From: Obrimoposthia wandeli
Lineage: Eukaryota
Length of the DNA stretch: 64,000 nt
Assembly (NCBI GenBank): GCA_977020255.1
Contig: CDROCS010002469.1
Coordinates: 1-64,000, forward strand
Reading direction: 5' to 3'
Position numbers and translations under genes: made by a program
In this document: positions 49,983 through 64,000 of the stretch, in pieces
How positions within the stretch are numbered: position 1 is the first letter of the stretch
Layout of the letters: the number at the start of each line of letters is the position of its first letter
Notes under the pieces: generated by a model
What the model was told of the DNA's origin: nothing
Database searches by the model: none
The model's input: the letters and a program-made list of their open reading frames with translations, nothing else

Positions 49983-50639
49983 TTACACTGCGATCCGCAG
50001 TGTAAAACCCTTTGATTCAGCGTCATCCTGATCAGAGCGGCGAATAATACTGCGAATCATTGTCACCATCGCATAAGCCGCTGCAACTGTTCCACTATTT
50101 TCATGGTAACCGCTAATATCAGCTTTATTCAAAGCATGCTCGAAAGAAACCGTACCGTATCTATTTTCTACCCCGTACGCATTAGCTGCTAGATGCATAG
50201 CGCAATTAACTGCTAAATTATCAATCCAATTGATAGGCAAATTGTATGCCTGGCAAGTCTGCTTAAGCAAGCGCATTTCAAATAGAGCGTCAAAGATAAT
50301 AATTTTACGATTTTTCACTATGGATTGTATTTTTGCTAACACTTCAGGCCACAAAGGACGCCCTTGCAACGCACTAAGATTAAGCCCGTGCAATCGATCT
50401 GCCTCTTTATCTATCGCAACACTTGGCATTAATTGCGAGTGAAATAGTACACTTTGATCAGTGTCCAATATAGCTATTTCAATCACTTGGGCGAACTGGT
50501 CCACACCTGTGGTTTTAGTGGTTAAATATACCGGCTTATCGCTTAGCCAGTGGACAGCGACACTCCCAGTTGGTTTTAAGTTAAATTTAGCATCACTACT
50601 AATAGCGCAACCTGCTTTGTTACTGTAGTTAAGTTTCAT
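49983..50639 (-). CDS. DnaQ/DEDDh exonuclease-fold protein with degenerate active site
   Basis: LTTKTTGVD (vs LDTETTGL), VIEIAILD, LHGL, FDALFE (vs YNAxFD), CAM, HENSGT (vs HRAxxD). Confidence 0.75.
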   Translation of the reverse strand: MKLNYSNKAGCAISSDAKFNLKPTGSVAVHWLSDKPVYLTTKTTGVDQFAQVIEIAILDTDQSVLFHSQLMPSVAIDKEADRLHGLNLSALQGRPLWPEVLAKIQSIVKNRKIIIFDALFEMRLLKQTCQAYNLPINWIDNLAVNCAMHLAANAYGVENRYGTVSFEHALNKADISGYHENSGTVAAAYAMVTMIRSIIRRSDQDDAESKGFTLRIAV

Positions 50640-50854
50640 ATATTACACCTTCAAGCACATAAATAATCGAAAGTTCTGCCGTTGATAATTGAGAACCATC
50701 ACTATTTATATGCTTCATAACGAGGAAGTGAGAATTTAAAATTTCACCCGATTAAGGTTGAATGTATTTCTTAATTTTATAAACACACCATAACTCATGT
50801 AAAATTTATAAACTCAATCCTGCAACTATTGATAAATAGCAGTATACTCAATTA

Positions 50855-50893
50855 TACTGATTATATATACACATACTGGTAATATAATCAGTA
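50855..50893. promoter_or_regulatory. Tandem LexA (SOS) boxes
   Basis: TACTG-GTAATATAAT-CAGTA at 50874-50893 is a perfect CTG-N10-CAG; CTG-ATTATATATA-CAC at 50857-50872 has one mismatch. Confidence 0.7.
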
Positions 50894-51286
50894 TTAAAAA
50901 GCCCTAATACAGCAGTTGATTTTATTACACACGTCAATATTAGCTTTTATATAGCGCTTTTTAGGCTGCATATTTAACACCACTACCAATAGTGAGCGAA
51001 AACCAAGCTACTAAAATTTTATAATAAAAAATTTAAATGAACTTAAACGATCTAATACTGCTCTATTAATATGCAGTGCTAATCAAATATTGTGGGCGTC
51101 AATCCTTAACAACCTTATTAAGTACCAAGGTTTTAAGGTAATTTTTGCTAAAGATTGGATTTGCTCCCCTCAACTCCAACCTTAATTTAAACAGTGATGA
51201 CTTATGTAATATGGCAGGTTACGATTTTTGCCATATTAGTTATGCGTAGCATTGTTAATATAAATCATGATTATGAGGGACCAATA

Positions 51287-51814
51287 ATGAAAACCACAAC
51301 TAAAGTATATCTAAGCTTATTTTCGCTTATTACTATCGGAATAGCAGGCTGCGCAAGCTCTCCATCATATGATGGCAATACGGACAAACGTTGGGCTGAT
51401 TTTAAGAAATGGACAAAAATCACTCAAGGCAGAACAGGAACGGGAGACCCTACTGGTTTAGTTGCCGCTGTTCATAAAGGAACAAATGGTTATCGTGATG
51501 TGTATGTTAACAATATCGCGCTAAAAACGAGCCAAGGAAGCGCACCTTATAGCTACCCTGTAGGATCTGTTATTGTTAAAGAACAATTTGATGATTTAGC
51601 TGCTTTTAACTCCCAACAACCCACCGATTTAACGATTATGGTTAAACTTACTGACAACGGTTCCAACGATGCCAAAAATTGGGGCTGGGCTGATGCTTAT
51701 AACGCCGAACTAAAACCTGAAAATGCTTTTTGTAGTAGCTGTCACACCGTGGTATTAAAGGATGATTTTGTTTTCACCAATGAGGACTTCTTGCAAAAAC
51801 ATAAATCTAATTAG
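51287..51814 (+). CDS. Cytochrome P460-family lipoprotein
   Basis: Lipobox IAGC; YPVGSVIVKE (cross-link Lys position), IMVK, WGW, single C-terminal CSSCH. Confidence 0.78.
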   Translation: MKTTTKVYLSLFSLITIGIAGCASSPSYDGNTDKRWADFKKWTKITQGRTGTGDPTGLVAAVHKGTNGYRDVYVNNIALKTSQGSAPYSYPVGSVIVKEQFDDLAAFNSQQPTDLTIMVKLTDNGSNDAKNWGWADAYNAELKPENAFCSSCHTVVLKDDFVFTNEDFLQKHKSN

Positions 51815-51835
51815 TCAATCGTACACACCTGCCAA

Positions 51836-51865
51836 AATAAAAGCTGACATTGATCGGCTTTTATT
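51836..51865. terminator. Bidirectional-type hairpin after the P460 gene
   Basis: AATAAAAGCTGA...TCGGCTTTTATT. Confidence 0.6.
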
Positions 51866-51971
51866 TTACTCGCTTCTCCTTATATAATATCTACATACAT
51901 GAAGTTTCTCGTAGCTATCTCATATAAAAAAATCCCCGACAAAAGCGAGGATTTTTTCATTCATTTACTTA

Positions 51972-52901
51972 TTACGTCGTTTGATCACCGTGGAATAATC
52001 TAACTACATGGCGAGCTTCTGCAAAAAACAACCAACGTTCTGCAAGTAGCCCACCAATCGTTGCAATCGAAGCTAGTATTAATAATGCACTACCACCTAA
52101 GCAAACCAAAAACATTGGTAATAGAAAAGCCACAAATAAAGTTGCGAAACGGATTTTTAATAGCTTATTTGCCGCTACAGTATAGCCAAATTCGTTATTA
52201 AGAAAACCGTTTGAGCTGTGCCCTTGATCTAACAAACGTACACTTGCCTGCGTAAAACCTGTTGCTGTTTTAATACTGCTACCCGATGGCTTACCTATCC
52301 AGAAGAAGTAAATAACCTTCACAGTGATGCCAATACTCAATAACACTAGTACCGAATTTTGCATTAAGCTTGATTGCACATCACCTAGTAGCGCTTGTAG
52401 CGCTAAAAGCAATACTGATCCTGACATTAAACCTAGCGCTAAATAATTTACAGGTGTTAGCGCACTATTCCACTGACGAATCGTTTTCAAGCTTGCATAG
52501 ATCATACTCGTGCAGAACAGGGTAATCATCGCTAAACCAATTGTAATCCAGCCCGCTGCTGCAAAAACTGCTGAAATCTCAGCACCATTTAAGTATACGC
52601 CTAGCAAGTAGATCAATAAAAAAGGGTAAAAAGCGACGGCGAAAACAGCTTCACGTGACAGCCAACTCGTTTTAAAACGGCTAAAAGCACGCCAAGCGTT
52701 TTTTGGATTTGCTAAATGCAGTGTTGATGACAACAAACCACCTGAAATCATCACAAATGACAATACACCAGCACTGAGCAGTAGTGTTTTATCTTGCAAT
52801 ACTGTTACGCCACTTAAGTGTCCTAATATCATTAGGAAAACCAAGCCGTAACCAGCACCAGAGACTACTGTAAAAACAAGCACCGAAAAAGCAGGATGCA
52901 T
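51972..52901 (-). CDS. soeC: DmsC-type membrane anchor of sulfite dehydrogenase
   Basis: MHPAFSVLVFTVVSGAGYG, STLHLANPKNAWRAFS, SWLSRE, ERWLFFAEARHVV. Confidence 0.82.
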   Translation of the reverse strand: MHPAFSVLVFTVVSGAGYGLVFLMILGHLSGVTVLQDKTLLLSAGVLSFVMISGGLLSSTLHLANPKNAWRAFSRFKTSWLSREAVFAVAFYPFLLIYLLGVYLNGAEISAVFAAAGWITIGLAMITLFCTSMIYASLKTIRQWNSALTPVNYLALGLMSGSVLLLALQALLGDVQSSLMQNSVLVLLSIGITVKVIYFFWIGKPSGSSIKTATGFTQASVRLLDQGHSSNGFLNNEFGYTVAANKLLKIRFATLFVAFLLPMFLVCLGGSALLILASIATIGGLLAERWLFFAEARHVVRLFHGDQTT

Positions 52902-52991
52902 ATTATTCTCCAATTTTTATAAACAGACTTTTAGGATGCAAAGCTCCGCTTTACACCCTAATCACATTACATTAATTAACTTAAAACGCGA

Positions 52992-53681
52992 TTAACGGCT
53001 AATAATTTTGTTAACCCAACCTTTTACGGTTTGGCTAATACTGGCCGTTTCATGCATGACAACAACTGGCTTATTACGCGGTGGCAAATACGTGTTCACC
53101 GGATTGTAGCCAAGCTCAGGTAATAACTGCTTACCTGCTCTGTCACGCACTAACTTACTAACTTCTGAGTTAGGATCATCAAAATCACCAAAGGTACGCG
53201 AGCGTGTCGGACAGGTTAGTACACAAGCAGGCTGACGCTCAGCTTCTGGTAGTTTCTGGTCATAAATACGATCCACACACAAAGTACACTTTTTCATCGT
53301 GCCTTCTTGTGGATCTAACTCACGTGCGCCATATGGGCAAGCCCATGCACATAAATTACAACCCATGCATTTATCTTGATCGACCAGTACTATGCCATCT
53401 TCAGTACGCTTATAAGAAGCGCCTGTAGGACATACTGTGACACAAGCGGCATCTTCACAATGCATACACGACATCGGCATATGCACCGTTTTAGAGTTTG
53501 GCGTATCGCCCACTTCATAAGTGCGGATACGGTTAAGCCAAGCACCATTAGGATCCTTTCCGTAAGGATCTTTATCAGATAAAGGACCTATCGTTCCCGA
53601 TGTGTTCCATTGCTTACACGCAGTTGCACAACCGTGACAACCAACACAAGAATCTAAATCAACAACTAAACCTAATTTCAT
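52992..53681 (-). CDS. soeB: 4x[4Fe-4S] electron-transfer subunit
   Basis: CVGCHGCATAC, CMHCEDAACVTVCP, CMGCNLCAWACPY, KCTLCVDR. Confidence 0.85.
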   Translation of the reverse strand: MKLGLVVDLDSCVGCHGCATACKQWNTSGTIGPLSDKDPYGKDPNGAWLNRIRTYEVGDTPNSKTVHMPMSCMHCEDAACVTVCPTGASYKRTEDGIVLVDQDKCMGCNLCAWACPYGARELDPQEGTMKKCTLCVDRIYDQKLPEAERQPACVLTCPTRSRTFGDFDDPNSEVSKLVRDRAGKQLLPELGYNPVNTYLPPRNKPVVVMHETASISQTVKGWVNKIISR

Positions 53682-56615
53682 TTACTTGTCCCCGCGAAAT
53701 AATGTGTCAGCCCAGCTGCGCACTATATTGACATTTTTATGTGTTGCATAGCTCAACATATCCGGTGATTTTTTAGCATTAGGCTGTGGTTTAAGCGGCG
53801 CAAACTGCGGCCAAGCGCCTGTTTCACCTTCTTTAGCCGGCGTAATTTTTACCCGCAAATCATACCAAGCAGCTTGCCCTGTCACTGGATCAGAGTTGGT
53901 GATTTTATCCATTTTATCACCCTTCGCAGGGAGTAACTCTGAAATCAAGTGGTTCATTAAGAACGCATCACTCGCTTCATTTGCGTCATCAGCAAGTCCC
54001 CAAGCACCACCGCGTTTAGCAATTGCGTTCCAAGTCCAAACCGTATGCTCGTTTGTGCCTTCCATCAGCTTCACTTGTACACGAATCTTACCGTTATGCG
54101 ACTCAACCCATGCCCAAGAAAGATCCTCAATACCTAGTTTTTCACCGGCTAAGCGGTTCATAAACAAGTAGTTTTGGTTCATGATTTGGCGCAGCCATGC
54201 GTTTTGGCTATCCCAGCTGTGATACATAAACATCGGGCGCTGGTTTACCGCATGAAACGGGTATTCATCTCTATCAATTCGCTGCTCTTCAAGCGGCATG
54301 TAATAGATAGGCAATGGATCAAAGTACTTAACTAAACGCTCTTTATGATGTTCTTCAGTAGGCATTGGACCATCATATAATCCTTGCCCTGCTAAACGGA
54401 ATGTCTGTAACTTTTCTGAATAAATCTCAATGAGAATTTGATCAGTACTACCGACCCAGCCAGCTTCTTTAGCAAGCTCTAAATAATCTTTATTAGCATG
54501 GCGCATATAGCGCTGATTCTCAGCTAGCTCATACTCAAAGAAACCTTCGTTTTCTTCGTAAGCTTCCCATTGGCGTGGATTTGGCTCGCCGCGTAATGAC
54601 TTAGTACCGTCTTTACCACGATAACCCGCTAAGAAACCAATACCCGGCTCTTTTTCGAAGTTGATGATGAAATCTTTGTAGTCATCGTATTTTCGCTCTC
54701 CATCTCCCTTCATAAATGCTGGAAACTCTAAGCGGCCAGCCATTTCAACCATAACTTCCTGCCATGACATAACATCACGATCAGGCTTTATTACCGGTAT
54801 ACGCACAGAATCACAAGCAGCATGTGGCTCTGAGATCGGTCTATCAAGCATAGAAATAGTATCGTAACGCTCTAGATAGGTAGTATCTGGAAGGACTAAA
54901 TCTGAGTAGGCAACCATTTCAGAGTTAAAGGCATCCGAACAAACAATAAACGGAATCTTATATCCACCATCGTCTTCTTTAGCACATAACATATCTAAGG
55001 TTTGCGCCGTGTTCATGCTGGAGTTCCAAGCCATATTAGCCATGAACAACATCAGTGTATCAATTTTGTAGGGATCGCCTTTTACTGCATTGCTTATCAC
55101 CATGTGCATCATCCCATGGCAAGATATAGGCGCATCCCAACTGTAAGCCTTATCAATACGTAACGGCTTACCATCATCATCAATAACCAGATCTTCAGGG
55201 CAAGTAGGGAAACCTAAAGGTGGCGATTTCAAAGGTGTATTTGGGATGTTTGTTTTAGCAGGTTTAATGCCTGGTGGTACGTGCTTAGGAAACGGAGGCT
55301 TAGCTAAATGCCCACCTGGGCAATCGATAGTACCTAATAAAATCTGCAACAAATGAATTGCACGACAAGTTTGAAAACCATTCGAGTGAGCAGATATGCC
55401 GCGCATAGCGTGCATAGAAACAGGGCGGCCAATAAACTTATCTTGCTTGCGCCCTGCCCAGTCAGTCCATTCTACATCTAAGGTAATGGTTTCTTTAAAG
55501 GCAACATGCGCCATTTCAAGTGCGATACGCTCGATATCTTCTGCGCTTACGCCACATTCTTTAGCCGCAACTTCAGGTGAATACTCATCATCTAAGTATT
55601 TCTCAATCAAAATACTCATCGCTGTGCGCAATGGTGTGCCATCAGGTGCTGTAAGCTCACCAAATAATGCAGGCGTTACATCTGAACGGTTAGCATCAAC
55701 ATAGGCTTCTTTTTGCAAATCCCAAACTTGTGGATGCTCAGAATCACCACGATAGAAAAGACCATCGCCTTTAACGCCCGGCGTATTTACCACTAACTGC
55801 GGTGCGTTGGTGTAACGGATTAAGAACTCATCATCAACCAGTTTATTTTTCAATAAAACGTGGATCATCGATAGTGCAAAAATACCATCAGTGCCTGGGC
55901 GAATAGAAATCCACTCATCAGCAATCGCTTGGTAACCGGTACGTACCGGGTTAACTGAAACAAATTTTGCGCCACGCTCTTTCAAACGTTTTAGGCCAAG
56001 CTTAAGCGGGTTAGAGTTATGATCTTCAGCAACACCCCACATCATGAAGTATTTAGTATTTTCCCAATCGGGATCTCCAAACTCCCAGAATGCATGACCC
56101 ATAGTGTAGAGGCCACCGGCCGCCATGTTTACAGAACAAAAACCGCCGTGTGCCGCCCAGTTTATAGTACCAAATTGGCTAGCCCACATACCTGTTAAGG
56201 CTTGCATTTGATCACGGCCAGTAAAATAAGCAAGTTTTTTAGGATCCGTTTCACGGATGCGCTTTAAACGTTTTTCTAAAATCCCAAGGGCTCTCTCCCA
56301 TGAAATTTCTTCAAACTCACCCGCACCGCGTTCAGTACCTGGCTTTCTAAGCAAAGGCGAACTCAGCTTAGCAGGAGAATACTGCTTCATAATACCTGAA
56401 TTACCCTTAGCACAAAGTACACCTTTGTTTATAGGGTGGTTAGGATTACCTTGAATATAACGCACCTTATTATCTTCAACAGTGACTTTAATACCGCAAC
56501 GGCAAGCACACATGTAACAGGTGGTAAATTTTGTTTCTTGTTTGTCTCTATCTTCAAATTCAGGTAAATCCGAAGCGATTGCAATACGATCTTCTTGGCT
56601 TGTCATGTCTACCAT
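53682..56615 (-). CDS. soeA: Molybdopterin sulfite:quinone oxidoreductase catalytic subunit
   Basis: TTCYMCACRCGI, NWAAHGGFCSVNMAAG, HAMRGISAHSNGF, MYHSWDSQNAWLRQ; no Tat signal seen, so cytoplasmic. Confidence 0.85.
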   Translation of the reverse strand: MVDMTSQEDRIAIASDLPEFEDRDKQETKFTTCYMCACRCGIKVTVEDNKVRYIQGNPNHPINKGVLCAKGNSGIMKQYSPAKLSSPLLRKPGTERGAGEFEEISWERALGILEKRLKRIRETDPKKLAYFTGRDQMQALTGMWASQFGTINWAAHGGFCSVNMAAGGLYTMGHAFWEFGDPDWENTKYFMMWGVAEDHNSNPLKLGLKRLKERGAKFVSVNPVRTGYQAIADEWISIRPGTDGIFALSMIHVLLKNKLVDDEFLIRYTNAPQLVVNTPGVKGDGLFYRGDSEHPQVWDLQKEAYVDANRSDVTPALFGELTAPDGTPLRTAMSILIEKYLDDEYSPEVAAKECGVSAEDIERIALEMAHVAFKETITLDVEWTDWAGRKQDKFIGRPVSMHAMRGISAHSNGFQTCRAIHLLQILLGTIDCPGGHLAKPPFPKHVPPGIKPAKTNIPNTPLKSPPLGFPTCPEDLVIDDDGKPLRIDKAYSWDAPISCHGMMHMVISNAVKGDPYKIDTLMLFMANMAWNSSMNTAQTLDMLCAKEDDGGYKIPFIVCSDAFNSEMVAYSDLVLPDTTYLERYDTISMLDRPISEPHAACDSVRIPVIKPDRDVMSWQEVMVEMAGRLEFPAFMKGDGERKYDDYKDFIINFEKEPGIGFLAGYRGKDGTKSLRGEPNPRQWEAYEENEGFFEYELAENQRYMRHANKDYLELAKEAGWVGSTDQILIEIYSEKLQTFRLAGQGLYDGPMPTEEHHKERLVKYFDPLPIYYMPLEEQRIDRDEYPFHAVNQRPMFMYHSWDSQNAWLRQIMNQNYLFMNRLAGEKLGIEDLSWAWVESHNGKIRVQVKLMEGTNEHTVWTWNAIAKRGGAWGLADDANEASDAFLMNHLISELLPAKGDKMDKITNSDPVTGQAAWYDLRVKITPAKEGETGAWPQFAPLKPQPNAKKSPDMLSYATHKNVNIVRSWADTLFRGDK

Positions 56616-57083
56616 CCAAGTTGAGTCTATGAATTACATAGTCAATAAACATAAGGTGTTAGTAATACTCAACAAACACGCGTAAAGTTTAAATATATAT
56701 AGTCACAGCATTTTAATTGTTATATTAGCTATAAGGTTAGATCTTATTCGAATATTGAAATAATTAACAACCTTACAAGTGCTTATAGTGATTATTGATG
56801 TATATCCTAGAAACTATGCGCCTTTAGAGCAAAGGCCAATCTTTAGTTAAAAATGGATCCAGCCTTATGATATACAGCTAACCTAGGATAATAGTGAGTC
56901 CTTTACGTTACTCATTCGGTACAATGCTTAACAAAACATACAATCTTTTTCACTTAAACTAAGCAGCTGATGTTTATAATTGAGCCTGTAAATAATTTCG
57001 TACCAACAGACCTTAAGTAAACTTCAATCTAAACTTGAGCCTTATAGCTAACATAGCCTCTCATATAAAAGTTAGCATTCTTA

Positions 57084-57116
57084 CTGGCTGCATGTAAAAC
57101 TAAAGACTGGCTCTGC
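57084..57116 (+). promoter_or_regulatory. 23-bp-period direct repeat upstream of the AAA+ gene
   Basis: CTGGCTGCAT (57084) and CTGGCTCTGC (57107). Confidence 0.45.
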
Positions 57117-57241
57117 AATTGCACGTAATAACATATAAAATAATAATCATATAATTCAATGCTCACTACGATACACCCTAATATCATGCCGATATTTTAA
57201 ACGCCAAAATCTAATGCTCATTACCACAATGGATTCACAAT

Positions 57242-58240
57242 ATGTCTGACATTAAAATCGATCAACCTGACCTTATGGTATCCGTCAGGGATGTTTTTGC
57301 CATTAACTCTATGCTAAAAGTGCCTGCTTTTAGTTTGCGTGACGAACATGTACCAGAAATAGATCCCGATTATGTATTTAACCCTGAAGTAACACTGGCA
57401 ATATTAGCAGGCTTTAGCAACAACCGTCGCGTAATGGTACAAGGTTTACACGGCACCGGTAAGTCAACACACATTGAGCAAATAGCTGCACGCCTTAACT
57501 GGCCCTGTGTGCGCATTAATTTAGACGGTCATATTAGTCGATTAGATTTAGTTGGCAAAGACACTATTGTTGTTCGCGATAATCAGCAAATAACAGAGTT
57601 TCAAGAAGGCATTCTTCCTTGGGCATTAAGACGCCCTACCGCGTTAATTTTTGATGAGTTTGATGCAGGTCGCCCCGAGGTCATGTTCGTTATTCAACGT
57701 ATATTAGAGCGTGACGGAAAATTTACGCTACTTGATCAAAATGAAGTGATTACACCGCATAACCAATTCCGTTTATTTGCCACAGCGAATACCATAGGCC
57801 TTGGCAATAGTACCGGCCTTTATCACGGCACCCAAATGGTTAACCAAGCACAAATGGATCGCTGGGATATTGTCACGAACTTAAGTTATTTGCCTTGTGA
57901 AGATGAAGTGAAAATTATCCAGGGGAAAGTTAAATCTCAAGAGAAGCCAATCGACATAGATACAATTAGATCTATGATCGCTGTTGCTGACATGACACGT
58001 AAAAGCTTTGCCGCAGGAGACATCTCAACTTTAATGTCTCCAAGAACAGTCATCTCATGGGCCGAAAACATTGGCATTTTTGATAACACGGCAGTCGCTT
58101 TCAAACTTTCTTTCCTCAACAAGTGTGACGAAGCTGAAAGACCCATTATTGCAGAATTTTTCCAACGTTGTTTTGACACCGAACTTTCAGAATCATGGGC
58201 AGATACTGCCAATCAGGTAATGGCTGATGGCCGACACTAA
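57242..58240 (+). CDS. CobS-like MoxR-type AAA+ ATPase
   Basis: Walker A GLHGTGKST, RINLDGHISRLDLVGKD, Walker B IFDEFD, ATANT, MSPRTV. Confidence 0.88.
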   Translation: MSDIKIDQPDLMVSVRDVFAINSMLKVPAFSLRDEHVPEIDPDYVFNPEVTLAILAGFSNNRRVMVQGLHGTGKSTHIEQIAARLNWPCVRINLDGHISRLDLVGKDTIVVRDNQQITEFQEGILPWALRRPTALIFDEFDAGRPEVMFVIQRILERDGKFTLLDQNEVITPHNQFRLFATANTIGLGNSTGLYHGTQMVNQAQMDRWDIVTNLSYLPCEDEVKIIQGKVKSQEKPIDIDTIRSMIAVADMTRKSFAAGDISTLMSPRTVISWAENIGIFDNTAVAFKLSFLNKCDEAERPIIAEFFQRCFDTELSESWADTANQVMADGRH

Positions 58241-59966
58241 CACTGCAACTCTTAAAGTTGAAAAGCTACAGCAGCATTTAGAAAAGCTCTGCGGCGCAAC
58301 GATAAGAGCAACCTCAGGACAACCAAGCTTTCGTTTTCGCGGCCAGCGCCCAGAAATACATGGAAAGTCTGCAATGATACGCGCGCCGCATTTGCGCCCA
58401 GACTTTGAAGAGGACAATTTTCGCTCTTTTCGCGGCGCCGCCGATGCAATTGCTTTGCGTCTTTTACATAGTGACAGCTGTTTACATCAGCAATTAATGC
58501 CTGAAAGCAACATTGGCCAGCTGATTTTTGAACTACTTGAGCAATTGCGCTGCGAGTCTTTAGTGAGTGAATTGCACCCTGGTGCACGCAAGAATTTAGA
58601 ACATCGATTTCGCCAATGGTGCAAACAGTTTTGTGCATCCGATACGGTAGACAATCAGCTGGGCTTAATGATTTTTACCATCGCTCAGGTTGTGTGGTGC
58701 CGCCTTACTAGCTTACCGATGAACCATGAAAGCGAAGATTTGATCGAACCCATGCGCATGATGATTGCTAGACATATTGGCGGCGCTTTGATGGGCATGC
58801 GCAAAAACACCACCGATCAACGCGTGTTTGCCAGCCATGCACATGTCATTGTTGATGTGCTAAACAGCCTACTACCTCAAGAAGATGATGAAAAGCCAGT
58901 TAAAGATAAAAAATCAAGCCTTAGCACTAGTAACTTTAGCTTGTATTTAGAGCCAAATGCCGAAGATGACAACAGCGATATCGCTCAAGCAGGGAAATCT
59001 CCGCAAATTCGTGGCATACGTGACATCCTAGAACAACTAAGCCAATACCAAATTTTCACCAGCAAACACGATGAAGTAGTGATGGCTGAAAAACTAGCAC
59101 TGCCCGCGCAGCTAGATAAATTTTGCAAAGTACAAGATCAACTACTCAAGAATAATGCTGTTAATATCCCTAAGCTAGCGCGTGATCTTGCAAAGATAAT
59201 TCCCGGTAAGCAATTTAGCGGTTGGAACTTCTCACAGGATGAAGGCTATATAGATGGCAGCATGCTGACTACACTGATCACATCGCCACAGTATTTGAAT
59301 ATTTTTCGTACTCAGCAACAACTCCCTAATGGCAATTGTGTTGTGAGTTTTCTCATGGATAATTCGGGGTCGATGAAAGAGCACATCCAACCAATATCGA
59401 ACTTAATCAGCATCCTTTGTAAAGCATTAGAGATGGTCGGTGCGAACACTGAAATTCTAGGCTTCACCACCAAATCATGGCAAGGCGGGAAAAGCCACAA
59501 ACAATGGATACGCAGTGGCAAACCTGAAAATCCAGGGCGTTTATGTGAAACCCGCCATATCATATACAAAGATGCGGATACCAAGTTACAGCGCGCTAGG
59601 CGCGGAATTGGAGCGATGCTAAAACTAGACCTTTTCAAAGAAGGTATCGATGGTGAAGCGCTTTTATGGGCTGCTAAACGCTTAAAGCAGCGCGGCGAGC
59701 AGCGAAAAATTTTAATTGTACTTTCAGATGGCTGCCCAATGGAGAGCGCTACCAACCAAGCTAATACTAGCAGTTATCTGGATAATCACTTAAGGCAAGC
59801 CGCCAGCATGATCGAAAATACCGGCGAAATTGAGCTTTACGCTTTAGGTTTTGGTTTAGATCTTAGCCCCTATTATCGACACAGCTTAGCACTTGAGATA
59901 CCCGAGAAAATTGAAAATTCAATTTTTAAAGAAATCCTGAAAATGCTCATGCGCAGAGGTGTTTAA
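58227..59966 (+). CDS. CobT-like von Willebrand A protein
   Basis: FRGAADAIALR, EQLRCE, MIDAS DNSGSM, LGFTT, EGIDGEALLWA, LIVLSDGCP; overlaps the AAA+ stop. Confidence 0.85.
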   Translation: MADTNTATLKVEKLQQHLEKLCGATIRATSGQPSFRFRGQRPEIHGKSAMIRAPHLRPDFEEDNFRSFRGAADAIALRLLHSDSCLHQQLMPESNIGQLIFELLEQLRCESLVSELHPGARKNLEHRFRQWCKQFCASDTVDNQLGLMIFTIAQVVWCRLTSLPMNHESEDLIEPMRMMIARHIGGALMGMRKNTTDQRVFASHAHVIVDVLNSLLPQEDDEKPVKDKKSSLSTSNFSLYLEPNAEDDNSDIAQAGKSPQIRGIRDILEQLSQYQIFTSKHDEVVMAEKLALPAQLDKFCKVQDQLLKNNAVNIPKLARDLAKIIPGKQFSGWNFSQDEGYIDGSMLTTLITSPQYLNIFRTQQQLPNGNCVVSFLMDNSGSMKEHIQPISNLISILCKALEMVGANTEILGFTTKSWQGGKSHKQWIRSGKPENPGRLCETRHIIYKDADTKLQRARRGIGAMLKLDLFKEGIDGEALLWAAKRLKQRGEQRKILIVLSDGCPMESATNQANTSSYLDNHLRQAASMIENTGEIELYALGFGLDLSPYYRHSLALEIPEKIENSIFKEILKMLMRRGV

Positions 59967-59977
59967 GCGTCTTACTT

Positions 59978-60010
59978 TTGGCTCTAACCTACAGGTTAAA
60001 CTGGCTCTAA
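59978..60010 (+). promoter_or_regulatory. 23-bp-period direct repeat
   Basis: TTGGCTCTAA (59978) and CTGGCTCTAA (60001). Confidence 0.55.
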
Positions 60011-60240
60011 AACTAAGAAAAAAGCAACCTTATACTCTAGTAGCTCTATGATATTGAATAGTATATTTATAGCTATCTGCATATTATTAATAATAATTTA
60101 TATCATTGAAGTAAGTAAGCAAATCCTTTTTTGCCACAATCTTCCCTTTAGTGTATTTATACTTAATAGAAGTAAAATACATTCGCTATTTTTTGAGCTG
60201 CGTGTTTCAATGAAATATGCAATAAATGAGACTATTAATT

Positions 60241-60633
60241 ATGAGCCAATATCCAACTTTAGAATCAATGGGCGTAAAGAGTGTAGAAGATGTAATTAAG
60301 TATACGATTCGCCATGAAAGCAATACTGACGTTTTAAAAATTTATTACAAAAGAGCAAAAGGCTCTTTTTTGTCTCGTAGTAAAAAATTCTCTTTTATAC
60401 GCGGTGTGCGCAGCATTCCTATTGAAAGCAGAAATTCCAAAGCTTTTGAAAACCTTAGCAACATCAGCCCACAATTAACACTCGCTATCCAAGAGCTTGA
60501 CCTTCTTCAAGCAGATTTATTAGAAGAAGAAAAGCTAGACCCTAAAGCTCAAATTTCAGTTCATATGGACCACCTAGAAAAAGTGGTAAATGATAAATTG
60601 AATGAAATGCAAGAACTTTTAAAGAAACTATAA
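60241..60633 (+). CDS. yaeH: UPF0325/DUF3461 family protein
   Basis: YPTLESMGV...DVLKIYYKRAKGSFLSRSKKFSFIR; start taken at MSQY. Confidence 0.78.
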   Translation: MSQYPTLESMGVKSVEDVIKYTIRHESNTDVLKIYYKRAKGSFLSRSKKFSFIRGVRSIPIESRNSKAFENLSNISPQLTLAIQELDLLQADLLEEEKLDPKAQISVHMDHLEKVVNDKLNEMQELLKKL

Positions 60634-61189
60634 TAAGTTAATTGGCAGATTTTTAACACAAAACAACTTGTAATATTGTTGCATAAATCCTCTGAGCAGA
60701 CTGTTTTAACTAATAAAGAGAGTATTAACGCCGTTTTCGCTGCTCTCTTTTATTACTGCTTATCCAAAAATCGATTACACCGCACAATGGCTAGTTTGCT
60801 ATACTTAAAAAACCATTTTGAATGGTATAATTTTTACCGTGTATTGAGTAACACGCAACAGATGATTGTTACTCTTCAACCTTTATCCCTAAGGGATGTT
60901 TGATGGTGATACATATTTATTCGTTAACTAATACTACTCATTACGGCGCTGCTCCATTTAACCAACTATTTCACCGCTATAAAAAACCTTTTATAAACTC
61001 ATTCAGAATTGATTTGGCATTTTAGCCGCATGAATTCCCAACAAAAGAGCACTTAACTCGTACAATAGTGAAAACCCGTTTAAAAACCGTTTATCTCGTG
61101 CTATATTTTCCTAGTTAATAAACTACTGTTACATTATATAAGCTACTGTTTTTTTTATATTAAATTAATTAAAAACCACCAATAAATGA

Positions 61190-61222
61190 TTGGTTCTAAT
61201 ATCAAACAGATACTGGTCCTAA
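61190..61222 (+). promoter_or_regulatory. 23-bp-period direct repeat upstream of the TRAP operon
   Basis: TTGGTTCTAA (61190) and CTGGTCCTAA (61213). Confidence 0.6.
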
Positions 61223-61419
61223 AAATAACAGCTAGTAAAGTTAACTATAGAGCTACATTGATTTGGGTCAGTATATGATCTTCTTACTGCTAAATGTAAT
61301 AACTTATGCCTTTACCAGTGAATTCAGAAGGTCATGATCAATAATAATGTAAGTAATAAACCCCTTCAAGAGTGGCTATTTAGACTCTAAAAGGGAAATT
61401 TAAATATCTGGAGTAACTG

Positions 61420-62424
61420 ATGATAACTAACAATAAAATCACAAAAGTACTTTCGTTTACCGCTGGTCTAGTTTTATCTACATCTGCTTTCGCATCTAAC
61501 TGGAACGTTGCAGTTGGTGATGGCGGCGGTAGTGCCCAAGAAGCATTGGGATTGAAGTTCGGCGAATTACTTAAAGAAAAAACGGGAGGAAAGCACAGTA
61601 CTAAGTTATTCCTTAACGGCCAATTAGGTTCTGAGCAAGACACCGTTAACGATTTAGCTTTAGGCGCTTTAGATTTTTCTATCTTAGCATCAAACAACCT
61701 AGCGCCTTTCTCTCCGACAATGGGTATTCTTTCTCTACCTTACATTTTTGAAAACCTAGAGCAAGCTGATAAAGTTGTTACTGGCGAAATTGGTGCTGAA
61801 CTGGTTAAAAACACCGTTCGTGATGCTGGCTCACGTGTTCTAGCTTGGACTTACTCAGGTTTCAGAGTTCTAAGTAACTCTAAGCACCCAATCAAGAAAC
61901 TAGCTGACCTTGATGGTGTTGTAGTACGTGTTCCTAAAAACGAAATCATGATCGATACCTATAAGTCTTGGGGCAATAACCCAACACCTATGGCTTGGTC
62001 TGAAACGTTCACAGCTCTTCAACAAGGTGTTGTAGATGGTCAAGACACGCCATACACAACTATCTATGCAATGAAATTTGGTGAAGTACAGAAGTACATT
62101 TCTGACCTTCATTACCTATTCTTGTTAGAGCCATTAGTTGTTTCTGAAGCTTTATTCCAAGCTCAAGACAAAGCGACTCAAGATGCAATGCTTGCAGCCG
62201 GCGTAGAAGCGTCTAAGTACAGCCTTCAATGGCTAAAAGACCAAGAATCTATCATCAAGAAAGAATTGGTTGAAAAGTACAACATGGAAATCAACACTAT
62301 CGAAGATGAAGCAGAATGGGCTAGCAAAGCACAAAAAGCTGTTTGGCCTAAATTCTACGAAAGCGTTGGTGGTAAAGACAAAGTTAACGCACTACTTCGC
62401 TCACTGGGCCGTGCTGAAATCTAA
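61420..62424 (+). CDS. TRAP solute-binding protein (DctP family)
   Basis: Signal peptide, NGQLGSEQD, YSGFR, VRVPKN, TALQQGVVDGQD. Confidence 0.9.
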   Translation: MITNNKITKVLSFTAGLVLSTSAFASNWNVAVGDGGGSAQEALGLKFGELLKEKTGGKHSTKLFLNGQLGSEQDTVNDLALGALDFSILASNNLAPFSPTMGILSLPYIFENLEQADKVVTGEIGAELVKNTVRDAGSRVLAWTYSGFRVLSNSKHPIKKLADLDGVVVRVPKNEIMIDTYKSWGNNPTPMAWSETFTALQQGVVDGQDTPYTTIYAMKFGEVQKYISDLHYLFLLEPLVVSEALFQAQDKATQDAMLAAGVEASKYSLQWLKDQESIIKKELVEKYNMEINTIEDEAEWASKAQKAVWPKFYESVGGKDKVNALLRSLGRAEI

Positions 62425-62484
62425 AACTTAATCCTTTTGTAAGTCTATTTTACAAAGAGAATTATTTTTATTAGATTCATCACC

Positions 62485-62516
62485 CAACTAACACACTTTA
62501 TTAAGTGTGTTAGTTG
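62485..62516 (+). terminator. Perfect intercistronic hairpin between dctP and dctQ
   Basis: CAACTAACACACTT-TATT-AAGTGTGTTAGTTG. Confidence 0.65.
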
Positions 62517-62534
62517 TTAAGCGGAGTACACGTT

Positions 62535-63089
62535 ATGGGAAAAAAACTCCTATTTATTTTAGACAATATAGAAAGCTATATTTGTCGCACTTTATTAGCT
62601 ATTTTTGTCTGCTTATTATTTTTACAAATTCTATCTAGACAATTCTTCAGTTACTCATTTTCTTGGAATGAAGAACTTTCAGTTTACTTATTTGTATGGT
62701 TTGTATTCTTTGGTGCCAGTTATGCTGCCAAACTAGCTGCTCACAACCGAGTCACCTTCCAGTTCAAAATTTTACCTAGCTTTATGCGCCCAATCCTTGA
62801 GTTCATCTCGGATTTAGTTTGGATTGCTTTTAACCTTTACTTTGTTTACCTCTCCATTGACTTCATTTTCAACAAAATGTTGCCTTTTAACAAATCTCAA
62901 ACCCTTGGCATTCATATGAAATACTTTTATATGGTACTGCCCATTGCGTTTACATTAATGACTATCCGCATTATTCAAGTGAACTACTACAAACTTGTTT
63001 TAGGCATTGATGTTCGTGACCCGGATACAAAAGAATTAGACGAGATAAAAGAATTAGAACTAGATCTTTCCGAAGACGATAAAAAATAA
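62535..63089 (+). CDS. TRAP small permease (DctQ family)
   Basis: WNEELSVYLFVW, GASYAAKLAAHNRV; hydrophobic segments. Confidence 0.87.
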   Translation: MGKKLLFILDNIESYICRTLLAIFVCLLFLQILSRQFFSYSFSWNEELSVYLFVWFVFFGASYAAKLAAHNRVTFQFKILPSFMRPILEFISDLVWIAFNLYFVYLSIDFIFNKMLPFNKSQTLGIHMKYFYMVLPIAFTLMTIRIIQVNYYKLVLGIDVRDPDTKELDEIKELELDLSEDDKK

Positions 63090-63122
63090 CAAGTAAAGCG
63101 GATTTAGCTTTAGGAGCTTTTC

Positions 63123-64000
63123 ATGGCAGAATCATCCATAGTACTTGTGCTGTTTGGAACATTCTTGTTCCTACTATTTATAGGCGCCCCCGTGACTGTG
63201 TCACTCGGCGCTGCAGCATTAGCCACTTATTTCTCTTTAGACAAAACCCCTATTGTTATGGTGCAAATGGCATTCAGATCAGTAGGTAATTTTCCATTAA
63301 TGGCACTCCCCGCTTTTATTTTAGCAGGGGCATTAATGGAAGCCGCAGGCATATCAAAGCGACTGGTCGCTGTCGCTGAAAGTTTTGCAGGCCCGTTCAC
63401 GGGCGGTATTTCTGCAGCTACCGTTCTAGCGTGTATGTTTTTTGGTGCTATTTCAGGATCGGGCCCAGCAACAACCGCCGCTGTCGGCATGTTAATGATC
63501 CCAGCAATGGTCAAACGTGGTTACGATAAAGGTTATGCTTCTGCTATTACGGCTTCTGCCGGTGGCTTAGGTATCATTATCCCGCCTTCAATCCCTATGG
63601 TAATTTACGGCATATCAGCCATAGGTTTAAGTGTACCTTTAGAAGCTGTCGCCAAATATGGTACTTTCCAAAGCGTATCTATCACTAAGATGTTTGTTGC
63701 AGGGGTAATACCTGGATTAGTCATCTCGTTAAGTTTATTAATACTTAACTATTTCCGCTGTCGTGCCTACGGCTATAAAGGTAGCGGAGCAGATTGGGAC
63801 ATGTGTGTTGTTGCTAAAGCAGTGCGCAGTGGGTTTTGGTCAATATTGGCACCCGTGGTTATTTTAGGCGGAATTTATTCAGGTTGGTTCACACCAACTG
63901 AATCAGCCATCATTGCCATTTTCTATACCTTATTTGTCGGTATCGTTATCCATAGAGAGCTCAAGCTAAAAGATATTTTCCGCTCTTTAGAAACGACTAC
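63123..64000 (+). CDS. TRAP large permease (DctM family), truncated by the window end
   Basis: Not in the ORF track. Reads MAESSIVLVLFG..., FPLMALPAFILAG, FFGAISGSGPAT, GLGIIIPPSIP, FTPTES. Confidence 0.9.
   Translation, partial: MAESSIVLVLFGTFLFLLFIGAPVTVSLGAAALATYFSLDKTPIVMVQMAFRSVGNFPLMALPAFILAGALMEAAGISKRLVAVAESFAGPFTGGISAATVLACMFFGAISGSGPATTAAVGMLMIPAMVKRGYDKGYASAITASAGGLGIIIPPSIPMVIYGISAIGLSVPLEAVAKYGTFQSVSITKMFVAGVIPGLVISLSLLILNYFRCRAYGYKGSGADWDMCVVAKAVRSGFWSILAPVVILGGIYSGWFTPTESAIIAIFYTLFVGIVIHRELKLKDIFRSLETT

What the first reader, a model, noticed from the sequence alone, without database searches (positions are those of the whole stretch)
51972..64000. CobN-less CobS/CobT-like AAA+/VWA pair within a probable organosulfonate-catabolism locus
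Seen: soeABC is divergent from a coupled AAA+ (intact Walker A/B) and VWA (intact MIDAS DNSGS) pair. The pair resembles CobS/CobT, but no cobN or other cobalamin gene is in the window. A TRAP operon follows. Known: SoeABC oxidises cytoplasmic sulfite, such as that released by sulfonate desulfonation, and MoxR-type AAA+/VWA pairs act as chaperones or activases for metallo- and cofactor-dependent enzymes. Inference: this pair is not a cobalt chelatase but a remodelling or reactivation machine for a sulfonate-pathway enzyme (SoeA maturation, or a desulfonating enzyme encoded beyond the window).
Basis: partly seen in the sequence, partly recalled or inferred. Interest (0 to 1): 0.75.

Follow-up and report, generated by a model that had tools for sequence, protein, structure and literature searches.

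The report
CobS/CobT-like motor tied to taurine breakdown
A gene pair that databases label as the motor of the vitamin-B12 cobalt chelatase belongs to a separate branch of that family that sits beside, and appears co-regulated with, the genes that split sulfite off taurine-type sulfonates. It probably serves that pathway rather than B12 synthesis.

Summary
A soeCBA-like operon (51972-56615, -) lies divergent from an overlapping AAA+/VWA pair (57242-59966, +) with intact Walker A/B and MIDAS motifs, followed by DUF3461 and a TRAP operon.

"CobN-less" is true only of the window. The same bacterium (an Oceanospirillaceae contig in a 1.35-Gb mixed assembly) has cobN in a riboswitch-led cob operon on another contig. 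That operon has its own ChlD-type AAA+/VWA gene.

The pair is not canonical CobST:
- Both proteins score under NCBIfam's equivalog cut-offs.
- CobT falls on the non-canonical side of a long, 100%-supported branch.

Non-canonical CobT tracks xsc (sulfoacetaldehyde acetyltransferase), not cobN:
- xsc was found in 21 of 22 genomes, against 14 of 191 in a class sample. cobN was found in 13 of 22.
- In 24 of 80 independent metagenome loci, xsc lies within 10 kb, typically as soeCBA<-pta<-xsc | iclR-cobS-cobT.

A 23-bp-spaced repeat, resembling TauR operators and conserved upstream of xsc in relatives, also precedes cobS, soeA, DUF3461 and dctP here.

Best reading: a CobN-independent remodelling motor recruited to the Xsc/sulfite pathway. 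The client (Xsc?) is inferred, not shown. I found no paper describing this. Scan note s1-244741 had already flagged the repeat on this same stretch.

The parts
51972..52913 (-). soeC-like membrane anchor (313 aa)
   Evidence: Pfam DmsC 79.9 bits, NrfD 25 bits.
52992..53681 (-). soeB-like 4Fe-4S subunit (229 aa)
   Evidence: Pfam Fer4_11 and related families. The DmsB/NrfC/DsrO-type NCBIfam hits all fall below cut-off.
53682..56615 (-). soeA-like molybdopterin subunit (977 aa), predicted to face the cytoplasm
   Evidence: Pfam Molybdopterin, Molybdop_Fe4S4 and Molydop_binding. The N-terminus has no twin-arginine motif. It is 86-99% identical in relatives, and homologues sit downstream of xsc-pta in metagenome loci.
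56835..56862 (-). Bipartite YTGG..N19..YTGG repeat pointing toward soeA (candidate operator)
   Evidence: It is the inverted partner of the cobS-side repeat (pair I1). It is conserved as CTGGnTCCAT-N13-TTGGCCTTTGC in L011-L014 and G014.
57084..57116 (+). Bipartite repeat CTGGCTGCAT-N13-CTGGCTCTGC upstream of cobS (candidate MocR/TauR-type operator)
   Evidence: It is conserved upstream of cobS in L011-L014, G011 and G014. It is one of only two window matches, at up to 2 mismatches, to a pattern built from xsc upstream sites of relatives; 0.20 are expected by chance.
57128..57155 (+). Best sigma-70-like promoter match for cobS-cobT
   Evidence: ATAACA-16-TATAAT, 10 of 12 positions, directly downstream of the repeat. 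This is a consensus match only.
57242..58240 (+). cobS-like AAA+ ATPase (332 aa)
   Evidence: Pfam CobS_N + AAA_5. TIGR01650 scores 519.7 bits against a cut-off of 558.55. It scores 468 bits to solved CobS 9ujv. Walker A and B are intact.
58227..59966 (+). cobT-like VWA/MIDAS adaptor (579 aa), 14-nt overlap with cobS
   Evidence: Pfam CobT + CobT_C. TIGR01651 scores 331 bits against a cut-off of 759. It scores 269 bits to solved CobT 9uka, with only 34 bits for the N-terminal domain. MIDAS residues D378, S380 and S382 are invariant. It lies on the non-canonical side of the tree.
59978..60010 (+). Bipartite repeat TTGGCTCTAA-N13-CTGGCTCTAA upstream of DUF3461
   Evidence: It resembles the TauR consensus CTGGACYTAA quoted in PMC5320631.
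60226..60633 (+). DUF3461 protein (135 aa)
   Evidence: Pfam DUF3461 122 bits. It lies next to cobT in the window's lineage and in several metagenome loci.
61190..61222 (+). Bipartite repeat TTGGTTCTAA-N13-CTGGTCCTAA upstream of dctP
   Evidence: It is conserved in L011, L013 and G011.
61420..64000 (+). TRAP transporter dctP (61420-62424), dctQ (62514-63089) and dctM (63123 to 64466, running past the window end)
   Evidence: Pfam DctP 235 bits and DctQ 99 bits. dctM was identified by homology across loci. The ligand was not determined.

Best explanation
The pair is a CobS-type AAA+ ring ATPase and a CobT-type VWA/MIDAS adaptor. It belongs to a non-canonical branch of the CobS/CobT family that works independently of CobN. 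This branch has been recruited to the Xsc pathway, in which taurine, isethionate or sulfoacetate are converted to sulfoacetaldehyde, then to acetyl phosphate plus sulfite, and the sulfite is oxidised by SoeABC.

Shown:
- The architecture and catalytic motifs are intact.
- The pair is separate from canonical CobT in the tree.
- It co-occurs with xsc in nearly every genome examined and often lies next to it.
- It persists in genomes in which no cobN was found.
- The organism's own cobN operon has a separate ChlD-type motor behind a B12 riboswitch.
- A conserved bipartite repeat is shared by the upstream regions of xsc, cobS, soeA, DUF3461 and dctP.

Inferred:
- A MocR/TauR-type activator switches on cobST together with the sulfonate genes.
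- The CobS hexamer uses ATP to pull, through CobT, on a client held by the MIDAS site, so as to mature or reactivate a pathway enzyme.
- The most likely client is Xsc. Its thiamine-diphosphate cofactor sits where sulfite, a known thiamine-cleaving agent, is released. This would work as CbbQ/CbbO does for Rubisco.
For: Family and motifs.

Not the cob-operon motor:
- cobN of the same organism lies in a riboswitch-led operon that starts with a 647-aa ChlD-like gene (Walker A GPRGSAKST, Walker B LYVDEVN, MIDAS DTSAS).
- The same ChlD-like gene lies 11-13 kb from cobN in G002, G011, G034 and G037.
- There is no riboswitch near cobST.

Tree: canonical CobT forms one side of a 1.14-1.27-long branch with SH-aLRT 100. 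The window, 17 genome copies and all 29 metagenome cluster representatives lie on the other side.

Co-occurrence:
- Among 61 relatives, xsc is in 11 of 12 CobT-positive genomes and 4 of 49 CobT-negative ones (Fisher p = 3.6e-8).
- All 10 further non-canonical genomes carry xsc, against a base rate of 14 of 191.
- cobN is in only 13 of 22.

Adjacency:
- xsc lies 2-9 kb from cobT in G426, G594, G608, G473, G450, G004, G005, G010, G011, G012 and G289.
- 24 of 80 metagenome loci, in 13 of 29 clusters, carry xsc. In 13 of the 34 loci with enough upstream DNA, xsc is divergent from cobS.
- pta, soeABC, MocR and TRAP genes recur around the pair.
- Nine canonical gamma loci carry none of these.

Regulation. 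The TauR consensus, and SoeABC (as BisC/HybA/DmsC) in TauR regulons, come from PMC5320631.

Domain divergence: the CobT N domain, which contacts CobN in the holoenzyme (preprint 10.64898/2026.07.21.739949), is the most diverged part. It is 21% identical between groups and 41% within the non-canonical group.
Against: - No experiment or expression data is available; no RNA runs were found.
- 13 of 22 non-canonical genomes do have cobN, so a second role with CobN is not excluded.
- Four xsc-bearing relatives and 8 of 14 xsc-bearing genomes in the class sample have no CobT-family gene, so Xsc can work without it.
- One lineage of metagenome loci places the pair next to a CaiB-type CoA-transferase, NudC and PhoH2, with no sulfonate gene within 10 kb.
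- In this window's own organism, xsc is on another contig.
- The repeats at cobS and soeA share only the YTGG cores and the 23-bp spacing with the published TauR consensus. A scan with that consensus alone is not above chance.
- No MocR gene was located in this organism.
- Five phylum-sample genomes were assigned to the non-canonical group by Pfam score only.
- The rooting is unknown, so the non-canonical group may not be a clade.
Confidence: 0.62

Rival explanations
1. The pair is a genuine cobaltochelatase motor. CobS and CobT work in trans with the organism's CobN, as in alphaproteobacteria where cobST are unlinked to cobN. The position next to soeABC is incidental.
For: The sequences clearly belong to the family: CobS scores 468 bits to solved CobS and 519.7 bits on TIGR01650, and the CobT VWA domain scores 233 bits to solved CobT. 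The organism has cobN and a full cob operon. 13 of 22 non-canonical genomes have cobN, against about 12% of the class sample. Public records name the proteins CobS and CobT.
Against: Nine of 22 carriers have no detectable cobN, including a closed genome. The cob operon has its own ChlD-type motor and riboswitch, and cobST has neither link. Twelve of 21 cobN-bearing relatives lack CobT. Both proteins score under the equivalog cut-offs and fall outside the canonical group. The CobN-contacting N domain is the most diverged part.
Confidence: 0.13
2. The pair is a maturation or repair factor for SoeABC, for example for insertion or protection of the molybdenum cofactor or the Fe-S clusters. This would resemble CoxD/CoxE for CO dehydrogenase or NorQ/NorD for NO reductase.
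For: The divergent soeCBA-cobST arrangement is conserved in the window's lineage, in 9 genomes including G014. A matching repeat lies on both sides of the shared intergenic region. soeABC is present in many xsc-cobST loci. In the class sample, SoeA is found in 9 of 15 CobT-positive genomes against 82 of 286 others (p = 0.018).
Against: 82 of 91 SoeA-bearing genomes have no CobT-family gene. G011, G034 and G037 keep cobST and xsc without soeA. In G011 the pair sits with MocR, xsc and TRAP genes only.
Confidence: 0.1
3. The pair is a general-purpose AAA+/VWA machine with no specific tie to sulfonates, such as housekeeping remodelling or stress repair. It would resemble the canonical CobST pairs kept by many genomes without cobN. 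The adjacency would then reflect shared ancestry or island structure.
For: 34 of 98 CobT-bearing Pseudomonadota genomes have no CobN-family gene, among them a 1.2-Mb genome. No third gene is conserved across 18 mixed loci. One non-canonical lineage has housekeeping-type neighbours.
Against: xsc linkage recurs in 13 clusters that differ by more than 30% in CobT sequence, and in several gene orders. Carriers have xsc in 21 of 22 cases against a 7% base rate. The repeat is shared with xsc even where xsc is on another contig.
Confidence: 0.1
4. The pair is an anti-phage defence module, since AAA+/VWA pairs occur in defence islands.
For: Only a weak P-loop-level match of the ATPase to IetA/IteA, at 21-23 bits.
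Against: There is no PADLOC hit for the VWA protein and no defence-type neighbours. The metabolic context is conserved instead.
Confidence: 0.02

Closest known systems
CobS/CobT, the AAA+/VWA motor of the aerobic cobaltochelatase CobNST
   Same: The domain set is the same (CobS_N+AAA_5; CobT N domain + VWA). The gene order is cobS then cobT, with overlap. Walker A/B and MIDAS are intact, and 57 CobT positions are fixed in both groups. CobS is about 60-70% identical to canonical copies.
   Different: Both proteins score below NCBIfam's equivalog cut-offs, and CobT sits on the other side of a long, fully supported branch. The N domain is only 21% identical. The pair is found in genomes without cobN and is linked to xsc, pta and soeABC rather than to cob genes. 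It has no riboswitch.
CbbQ/CbbO, NorQ/NorD and CoxD/CoxE: MoxR-type AAA+ ATPase plus VWA adaptor pairs that activate or mature a neighbouring enzyme (from general knowledge)
   Same: It is a two-gene AAA+ plus VWA/MIDAS unit encoded beside the gene of a candidate client enzyme. CbbQ is a weak sequence match of the ATPase, at 32-35 bits.
   Different: The ATPase is CobS-type, with midasin-like AAA_5 matches at 98-121 bits. The adaptor has the CobT N domain. The proposed client, a thiamine-diphosphate enzyme, has no known activase.
The tauR-xsc-pta-soeABC module of Ruegeria pomeroyi and TauR regulons of Rhodobacterales (PMC4334477, PMC5320631)
   Same: The enzymes and their order match: soeCBA, pta, xsc and a MocR regulator. 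The operators are direct repeats with a CTGG core about two helical turns apart.
   Different: The published regulons list no CobS or CobT. Here and in many loci, a cobS-cobT unit, often preceded by an IclR-type regulator gene, lies divergent from xsc or soeA.

Membership tests
Cobaltochelatase motor CobS/CobT (CobNST) | CobS: AAA+ ATPase with CobS_N domain and intact Walker A/B | tested here: met
   Pfam CobS_N 42 bits and AAA_5 47.8 bits; GLHGTGKST and LIFDEFD.
Cobaltochelatase motor CobS/CobT (CobNST) | The proteins score above NCBIfam's equivalog cut-offs (TIGR01650, TIGR01651) | tested here: not met
   CobS scores 519.7 against 558.55; CobT scores 331.1 against 759.05.
Cobaltochelatase motor CobS/CobT (CobNST) | CobT: N domain plus VWA domain with MIDAS | tested here: met
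   Pfam CobT 104.9 bits and CobT_C 176.1 bits; DNSGS and LSDG.
Cobaltochelatase motor CobS/CobT (CobNST) | Groups with canonical CobT in a tree | tested here: not met
   Canonical CobT is one side of a branch of length 1.14-1.27 with SH-aLRT 100, and the window lies on the other side.
Cobaltochelatase motor CobS/CobT (CobNST) | Depends on a CobN partner in the genome | tested here: inconclusive
   cobN is present in this organism. It was not found in 9 of 22 genomes with the non-canonical pair, one of them closed.
Cobaltochelatase motor CobS/CobT (CobNST) | Cobalamin-linked context or regulation | tested here: not met
   No riboswitch lies in 50000-64000. The cob operon on C2866 has one, plus its own ChlD-type gene.
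Cobaltochelatase motor CobS/CobT (CobNST) | Drives cobalt insertion by CobN | not testable with these tools
   This needs a biochemical assay or a knockout.
MoxR/VWA-type enzyme activase (CbbQO-like) | AAA+ ATPase and VWA/MIDAS adaptor encoded as one unit | tested here: met
   The genes overlap by 14 nt, and the cobS-cobT order is kept in all loci examined.
MoxR/VWA-type enzyme activase (CbbQO-like) | Conserved genomic linkage to the client enzyme's gene | tested here: met
   xsc lies within 10 kb in 24 of 80 metagenome loci (13 of 29 clusters) and in at least 11 genomes. The client's identity remains an inference.
MoxR/VWA-type enzyme activase (CbbQO-like) | ATP-dependent remodelling or reactivation of the client | not testable with these tools
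   This needs in vitro reconstitution.
TauR (MocR-type) taurine regulon | Direct repeats like CTGGACYTAA, two to three helical turns apart, upstream of the target genes | tested here: inconclusive
   The sites at 59978 and 61190 match the consensus with 1-3 mismatches per half-site. The sites at cobS and soeA share only the YTGG core and the spacing. The same repeat lies upstream of xsc in relatives, and a pattern built from those sites picks out the cobS and DUF3461 sites.
TauR (MocR-type) taurine regulon | A MocR-family regulator gene is present | tested here: inconclusive
   MocR genes lie next to xsc or cobT in G011, L115 and at least 8 metagenome loci. None was located in this organism, and orthology to TauR was not tested.
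SoeABC cytoplasmic sulfite dehydrogenase | Three subunits: a Mo-bisPGD subunit without export signal, an Fe-S subunit and an NrfD/DmsC-type anchor | tested here: met
SoeABC cytoplasmic sulfite dehydrogenase | Orthology to characterised SoeA (Allochromatium vinosum, Ruegeria pomeroyi) | not tested
   No reference sequence was on hand. Support is indirect: homologues sit downstream of xsc-pta, as soeCBA does in R. pomeroyi.

The most novel reading that the evidence does not exclude
Non-canonical CobST is a dedicated reactivase of sulfoacetaldehyde acetyltransferase. The CobT MIDAS domain grips Xsc, and the CobS ring opens it so that thiamine diphosphate damaged by the enzyme's own product, sulfite, can be exchanged. 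This would be the first activase known for a thiamine-diphosphate enzyme and a second, chelatase-independent job for the CobS/CobT fold.
Probability: 0.2. Interest if true: 0.85.

Novelty: new variant of a known kind. Interest (0 to 1): 0.68.

Why it matters
Databases name these proteins cobaltochelatase subunits. Genome-based predictions of B12 synthesis therefore count them wrongly.

If the link to Xsc is functional, the widespread taurine and C2-sulfonate pathway of marine and host-associated bacteria has an unrecognised ATP-driven accessory component. The CobS/CobT machine would also have a second client besides CobN.

The claim can be tested directly by knockouts and pull-downs in cultivable carriers.

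The wider finding also matters. About a third of CobT-bearing Pseudomonadota lack any CobN-family gene, so the chelatase label is unsafe for the family as a whole.

Tried and rejected
- A first neighbourhood comparison of 18 loci mixed canonical and non-canonical copies and found no conserved third gene. The signal appeared only after splitting by subfamily.
- Scanning the window with the published alphaproteobacterial TauR consensus alone gave 4 paired sites against 3.0 expected, which is not significant.
- A sigma-54 reading of the repeats was rejected by eye: the GG and GC elements are not 12 bases apart.
- Rfam found no riboswitch near the pair.
- PADLOC gave no defence assignment.
- PDB matches of the TRAP binding protein did not reveal its ligand.
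- No RNA sequencing run holds the stretch.
- The first own-genome xsc search failed and was repeated.
- Wiethaus et al. 2008 on TauR is not held in the library. The consensus is therefore cited from PMC5320631.
- ORF calling in high-GC loci produced antisense artefacts. Counts there rest on tblastn with named queries instead.
- The large profile search and structure prediction were not run. Neither would decide between the explanations.


Full report
**What is in the window**

- On the minus strand lie a DmsC/NrfD-type anchor (51972-52913), a 4Fe-4S protein (52992-53681) and a 977-aa molybdopterin oxidoreductase (53682-56615).
- The oxidoreductase has an N-terminal Fe4S4 motif and no twin-arginine signal. 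This is the layout expected of cytoplasm-facing SoeABC.
- After a 626-bp gap come a 332-aa AAA+ protein (57242-58240; Walker A GLHGTGKST, Walker B LIFDEFD) and, overlapping it by 14 nt, a 579-aa protein (58227-59966) with MIDAS DNSGS.
- Pfam assigns CobS_N+AAA_5 to the first and CobT+CobT_C to the second.
- DUF3461 and a TRAP operon (dctP, dctQ, dctM) follow.
- Rfam finds no riboswitch between 50000 and 64000.

**Where the window comes from, and cobN**

- The window is the start of a 453-kb bacterial contig inside a 1.35-Gb assembly of several organisms.
- Its CobT is 97% identical to that of an Oceanospirillaceae MAG. It is 71-75% identical to those of three other gammaproteobacteria, one of them an Osedax symbiont.
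- "CobN-less" is true only of the window. Contig C2866 of the same assembly carries a cobN that is 95.8% identical to the cobN of that MAG.
- That cobN lies in a complete cob operon with cobU, cobT-DMB, cobC, cobS-ribazole, cbiB, cobD, cobQ, cobN, cobW, cobM, cobJ, cbiG, cobI, cobL, cobK, cbiD, cobB and cobO.
- The operon opens with a cobalamin riboswitch (63 bits).
- The riboswitch is followed by a 647-aa ChlD-type AAA+/VWA gene with usable motifs: GPRGSAKST, LYVDEVN and MIDAS DTSAS.
- The same ChlD-type gene lies 11-13 kb from cobN in G002, G011, G034 and G037. CobN therefore already has an operon-encoded motor of the kind that Rodionov and co-workers proposed, as cited in PMC9227772.

**Is the pair canonical CobST?**

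- By sequence it is clearly in the family. CobS scores 468 bits to solved CobS, and the CobT VWA domain scores 233 bits to solved CobT. The CobT N domain scores only 34 bits.
- Both proteins fall under NCBIfam's equivalog cut-offs: 519.7 against 558.55, and 331 against 759.
- In a tree of 57 CobT proteins, canonical CobT (39 rows) is set off by a branch of length 1.27 with SH-aLRT 100. The window and 17 genome copies lie on the other side.
- A second tree, with representatives of 29 metagenome clusters, gives the same split: length 1.14, support 100.
- The root is unknown, so I call the window's side "non-canonical" rather than a clade.
- The two groups share 57 fixed positions, including the MIDAS residues.
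- The N domain is 41% identical within the non-canonical group but 21% between groups. In the recent holoenzyme structure, this domain and the MIDAS face are what touch CobN (preprint 10.64898/2026.07.21.739949).

**What the pair travels with**

Among 61 relatives of G002:
- 12 have the non-canonical CobT.
- cobN is in 9 of these 12, soeA in 9 of 12 and xsc in 11 of 12.
- xsc is in only 4 of the 49 genomes without CobT (Fisher p = 3.6e-8).
- G014, a closed 5.2-Mb genome, keeps soeCBA, sulP, cobS, cobT and the TRAP genes but has no cobN.
- G011, G034 and G037 keep the pair and xsc without soeA.

In an even sample of 301 genomes of the class, all at least 90% complete:
- 15 carry a CobT_C protein, 35 a CobN-family gene and 91 a SoeA homologue.
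- Only 4 of the 15 CobT-positive genomes have cobN.
- 82 of the 91 SoeA-positive genomes have no CobT.

All ten non-canonical carriers outside the relatives have xsc above the curated cut-off. The base rate is 14 of 191.

Over all 22 carriers, xsc is present in 21 and cobN in 13. Five of these carriers were assigned to the non-canonical group by Pfam score only, because their sequences could not be fetched.

**Adjacency**

- xsc lies 2-9 kb from cobT in G426, G594, G608, G473, G450, G004, G005, G010, G011, G012 and G289.
- In G011 the order is MocR regulator, xsc, then dctMQP, cobT and cobS on the other strand.
- As an independent test, I seeded a metagenome scan with an alignment of 11 non-canonical CobT proteins. 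It returned 80 loci forming 29 clusters at 70% identity.
- xsc lies inside 24 of these loci, in 13 clusters. In 13 of the 34 loci with at least 3 kb upstream of cobS, xsc is the divergent neighbour.
- The commonest layout is soeCBA<-pta<-xsc<- | ->iclR->cobS->cobT, often with a MocR gene next to cobT.
- This is the known tauR-xsc-pta-soeABC module of Ruegeria pomeroyi (PMC4334477) with an added cobST unit.
- Nine canonical gamma loci of 16-20 kb hold none of these genes.
- One lineage is an exception. Its pair sits beside a CaiB-type CoA-transferase, NudC and PhoH2, with no sulfonate gene in reach.

**Regulation**

- An earlier scan note on this same stretch (s1-244741) pointed to YTGGNYCTAA repeats with a 23-bp period.
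- I find four bipartite sites with the same 23-bp spacing. One points at soeA (56835-56862, minus strand). The others lie upstream of cobS (57084-57116), DUF3461 (59978-60010) and dctP (61190-61222).
- The cobS and soeA sites are conserved in relatives whose CobT is only 47-75% identical.
- The cobS site abuts the best sigma-70-like promoter match.
- The TauR consensus of Rhodobacter capsulatus is CTGGACYTAA in direct repeats. TauR regulons of Rhodobacterales include BisC/HybA/DmsC, that is SoeABC, but no CobS or CobT (PMC5320631).
- A scan with that consensus alone is not above chance.
- The same bipartite repeat (CTGGC-N18-CTGGTTCTAT) lies about 170 bp upstream of xsc in G001, G011 and G002, where xsc can be on another contig.
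- A pattern built from those xsc sites alone finds only two places in the 64-kb window at up to two mismatches: the cobS site and the DUF3461 site. By chance 0.20 are expected.
- I read this as good evidence for a shared regulon, and as moderate evidence that the regulator is TauR-like.

**Explanation and rivals**

- The best-supported reading is a CobN-independent CobS/CobT-type motor serving the Xsc/sulfite pathway.
- Xsc as the client, and reactivation after sulfite damage to its thiamine cofactor, are inferences from linkage and from general knowledge of CbbQO-type activases and of thiamine cleavage by sulfite.
- A role with CobN cannot be excluded where cobN exists, but nothing requires it.
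- SoeA maturation fits the window's own layout but not the wider distribution.
- A defence role has no support.

**Novelty**

Public records call the proteins CobT and CobS or "AAA family ATPase". Full-text searches found no paper linking CobS/CobT to xsc or taurine.

**Limits**

- No expression data are available.
- The organism's own xsc contigs could not be read.
- Co-occurrence counts are not fully corrected for shared ancestry.

Noticed in passing
G000:C2866:62109-88055 (loci L019-L022): This is the complete cob operon of the same organism. It is led by a cobalamin riboswitch (C2866 about 87913-88055) and a 647-aa ChlD-type gene whose Walker A reads GPRGSAKST, an MCM-like AKS variant. It contains cbiD and cbiG alongside cobN and cobW.
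   Followed up: partly
Phylum and class genome samples: Canonical-type CobT is also often found without any CobN-family gene. This holds for 34 of 98 CobT-bearing Pseudomonadota genomes and 8 of 9 canonical-type gamma genomes, including a 1.2-Mb genome (G280). What those orphan pairs do is unexplained.
   Followed up: partly
Canonical-type gamma genomes G157, G171, G317, G328: Four of nine gamma genomes with canonical-type CobT also carry xsc, against a base rate of 14 of 191 (binomial p about 0.003). xsc is not near cobT in these genomes. I cannot tell whether this is shared ecology or a wider link.
   Followed up: no
L129, L139, L142, L156, L160, L168, L186: One lineage of non-canonical cobST lies divergent from a CaiB-type CoA-transferase and a 155-aa unknown protein. 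NudC lies upstream and PhoH2 and PpnN downstream. No sulfonate gene lies within 10 kb.
   Followed up: partly
L132, L149, L175, L178, L180, L193 and others: An IclR-family regulator gene of about 275 aa sits between xsc and cobS, co-directional with cobS, in 17 metagenome loci. It may control the pair in those lineages.
   Followed up: partly
G014:C1:4760234-4762048; L042:3334-5076; L122:4283-6016: A SulP-family permease is divergent from soeA, and in G014 it lies directly upstream of cobS. It is a plausible exporter for the sulfate made by SoeABC.
   Followed up: partly
window 51194-51814 (+): A cytochrome P460-family protein (206 aa) is encoded just downstream of soeC on the opposite strand. 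It is absent from that position in L011-L014.
   Followed up: no
window 49983-50639 (-): This 218-aa protein is a DnaQ-like DEDDh exonuclease homologue with weak family scores. It is conserved in relatives at 49-82% identity. Another scan note (s1-244759) covers it.
   Followed up: no
G000:C998:221839-222825 and G000:C5466:8832-12263: The assembly holds other bacteria. One has a second CobT-like gene 35% identical to the window's. Another has a cobN 77% identical to that of the window's organism. Further cobN-like genes lie on low-GC contigs.
   Followed up: no
window 60226-60633 and L117-L124, L185: DUF3461 (YaeH-like) lies next to cobT in the window's lineage and has its own copy of the bipartite repeat. 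Its role is unknown.
   Followed up: partly
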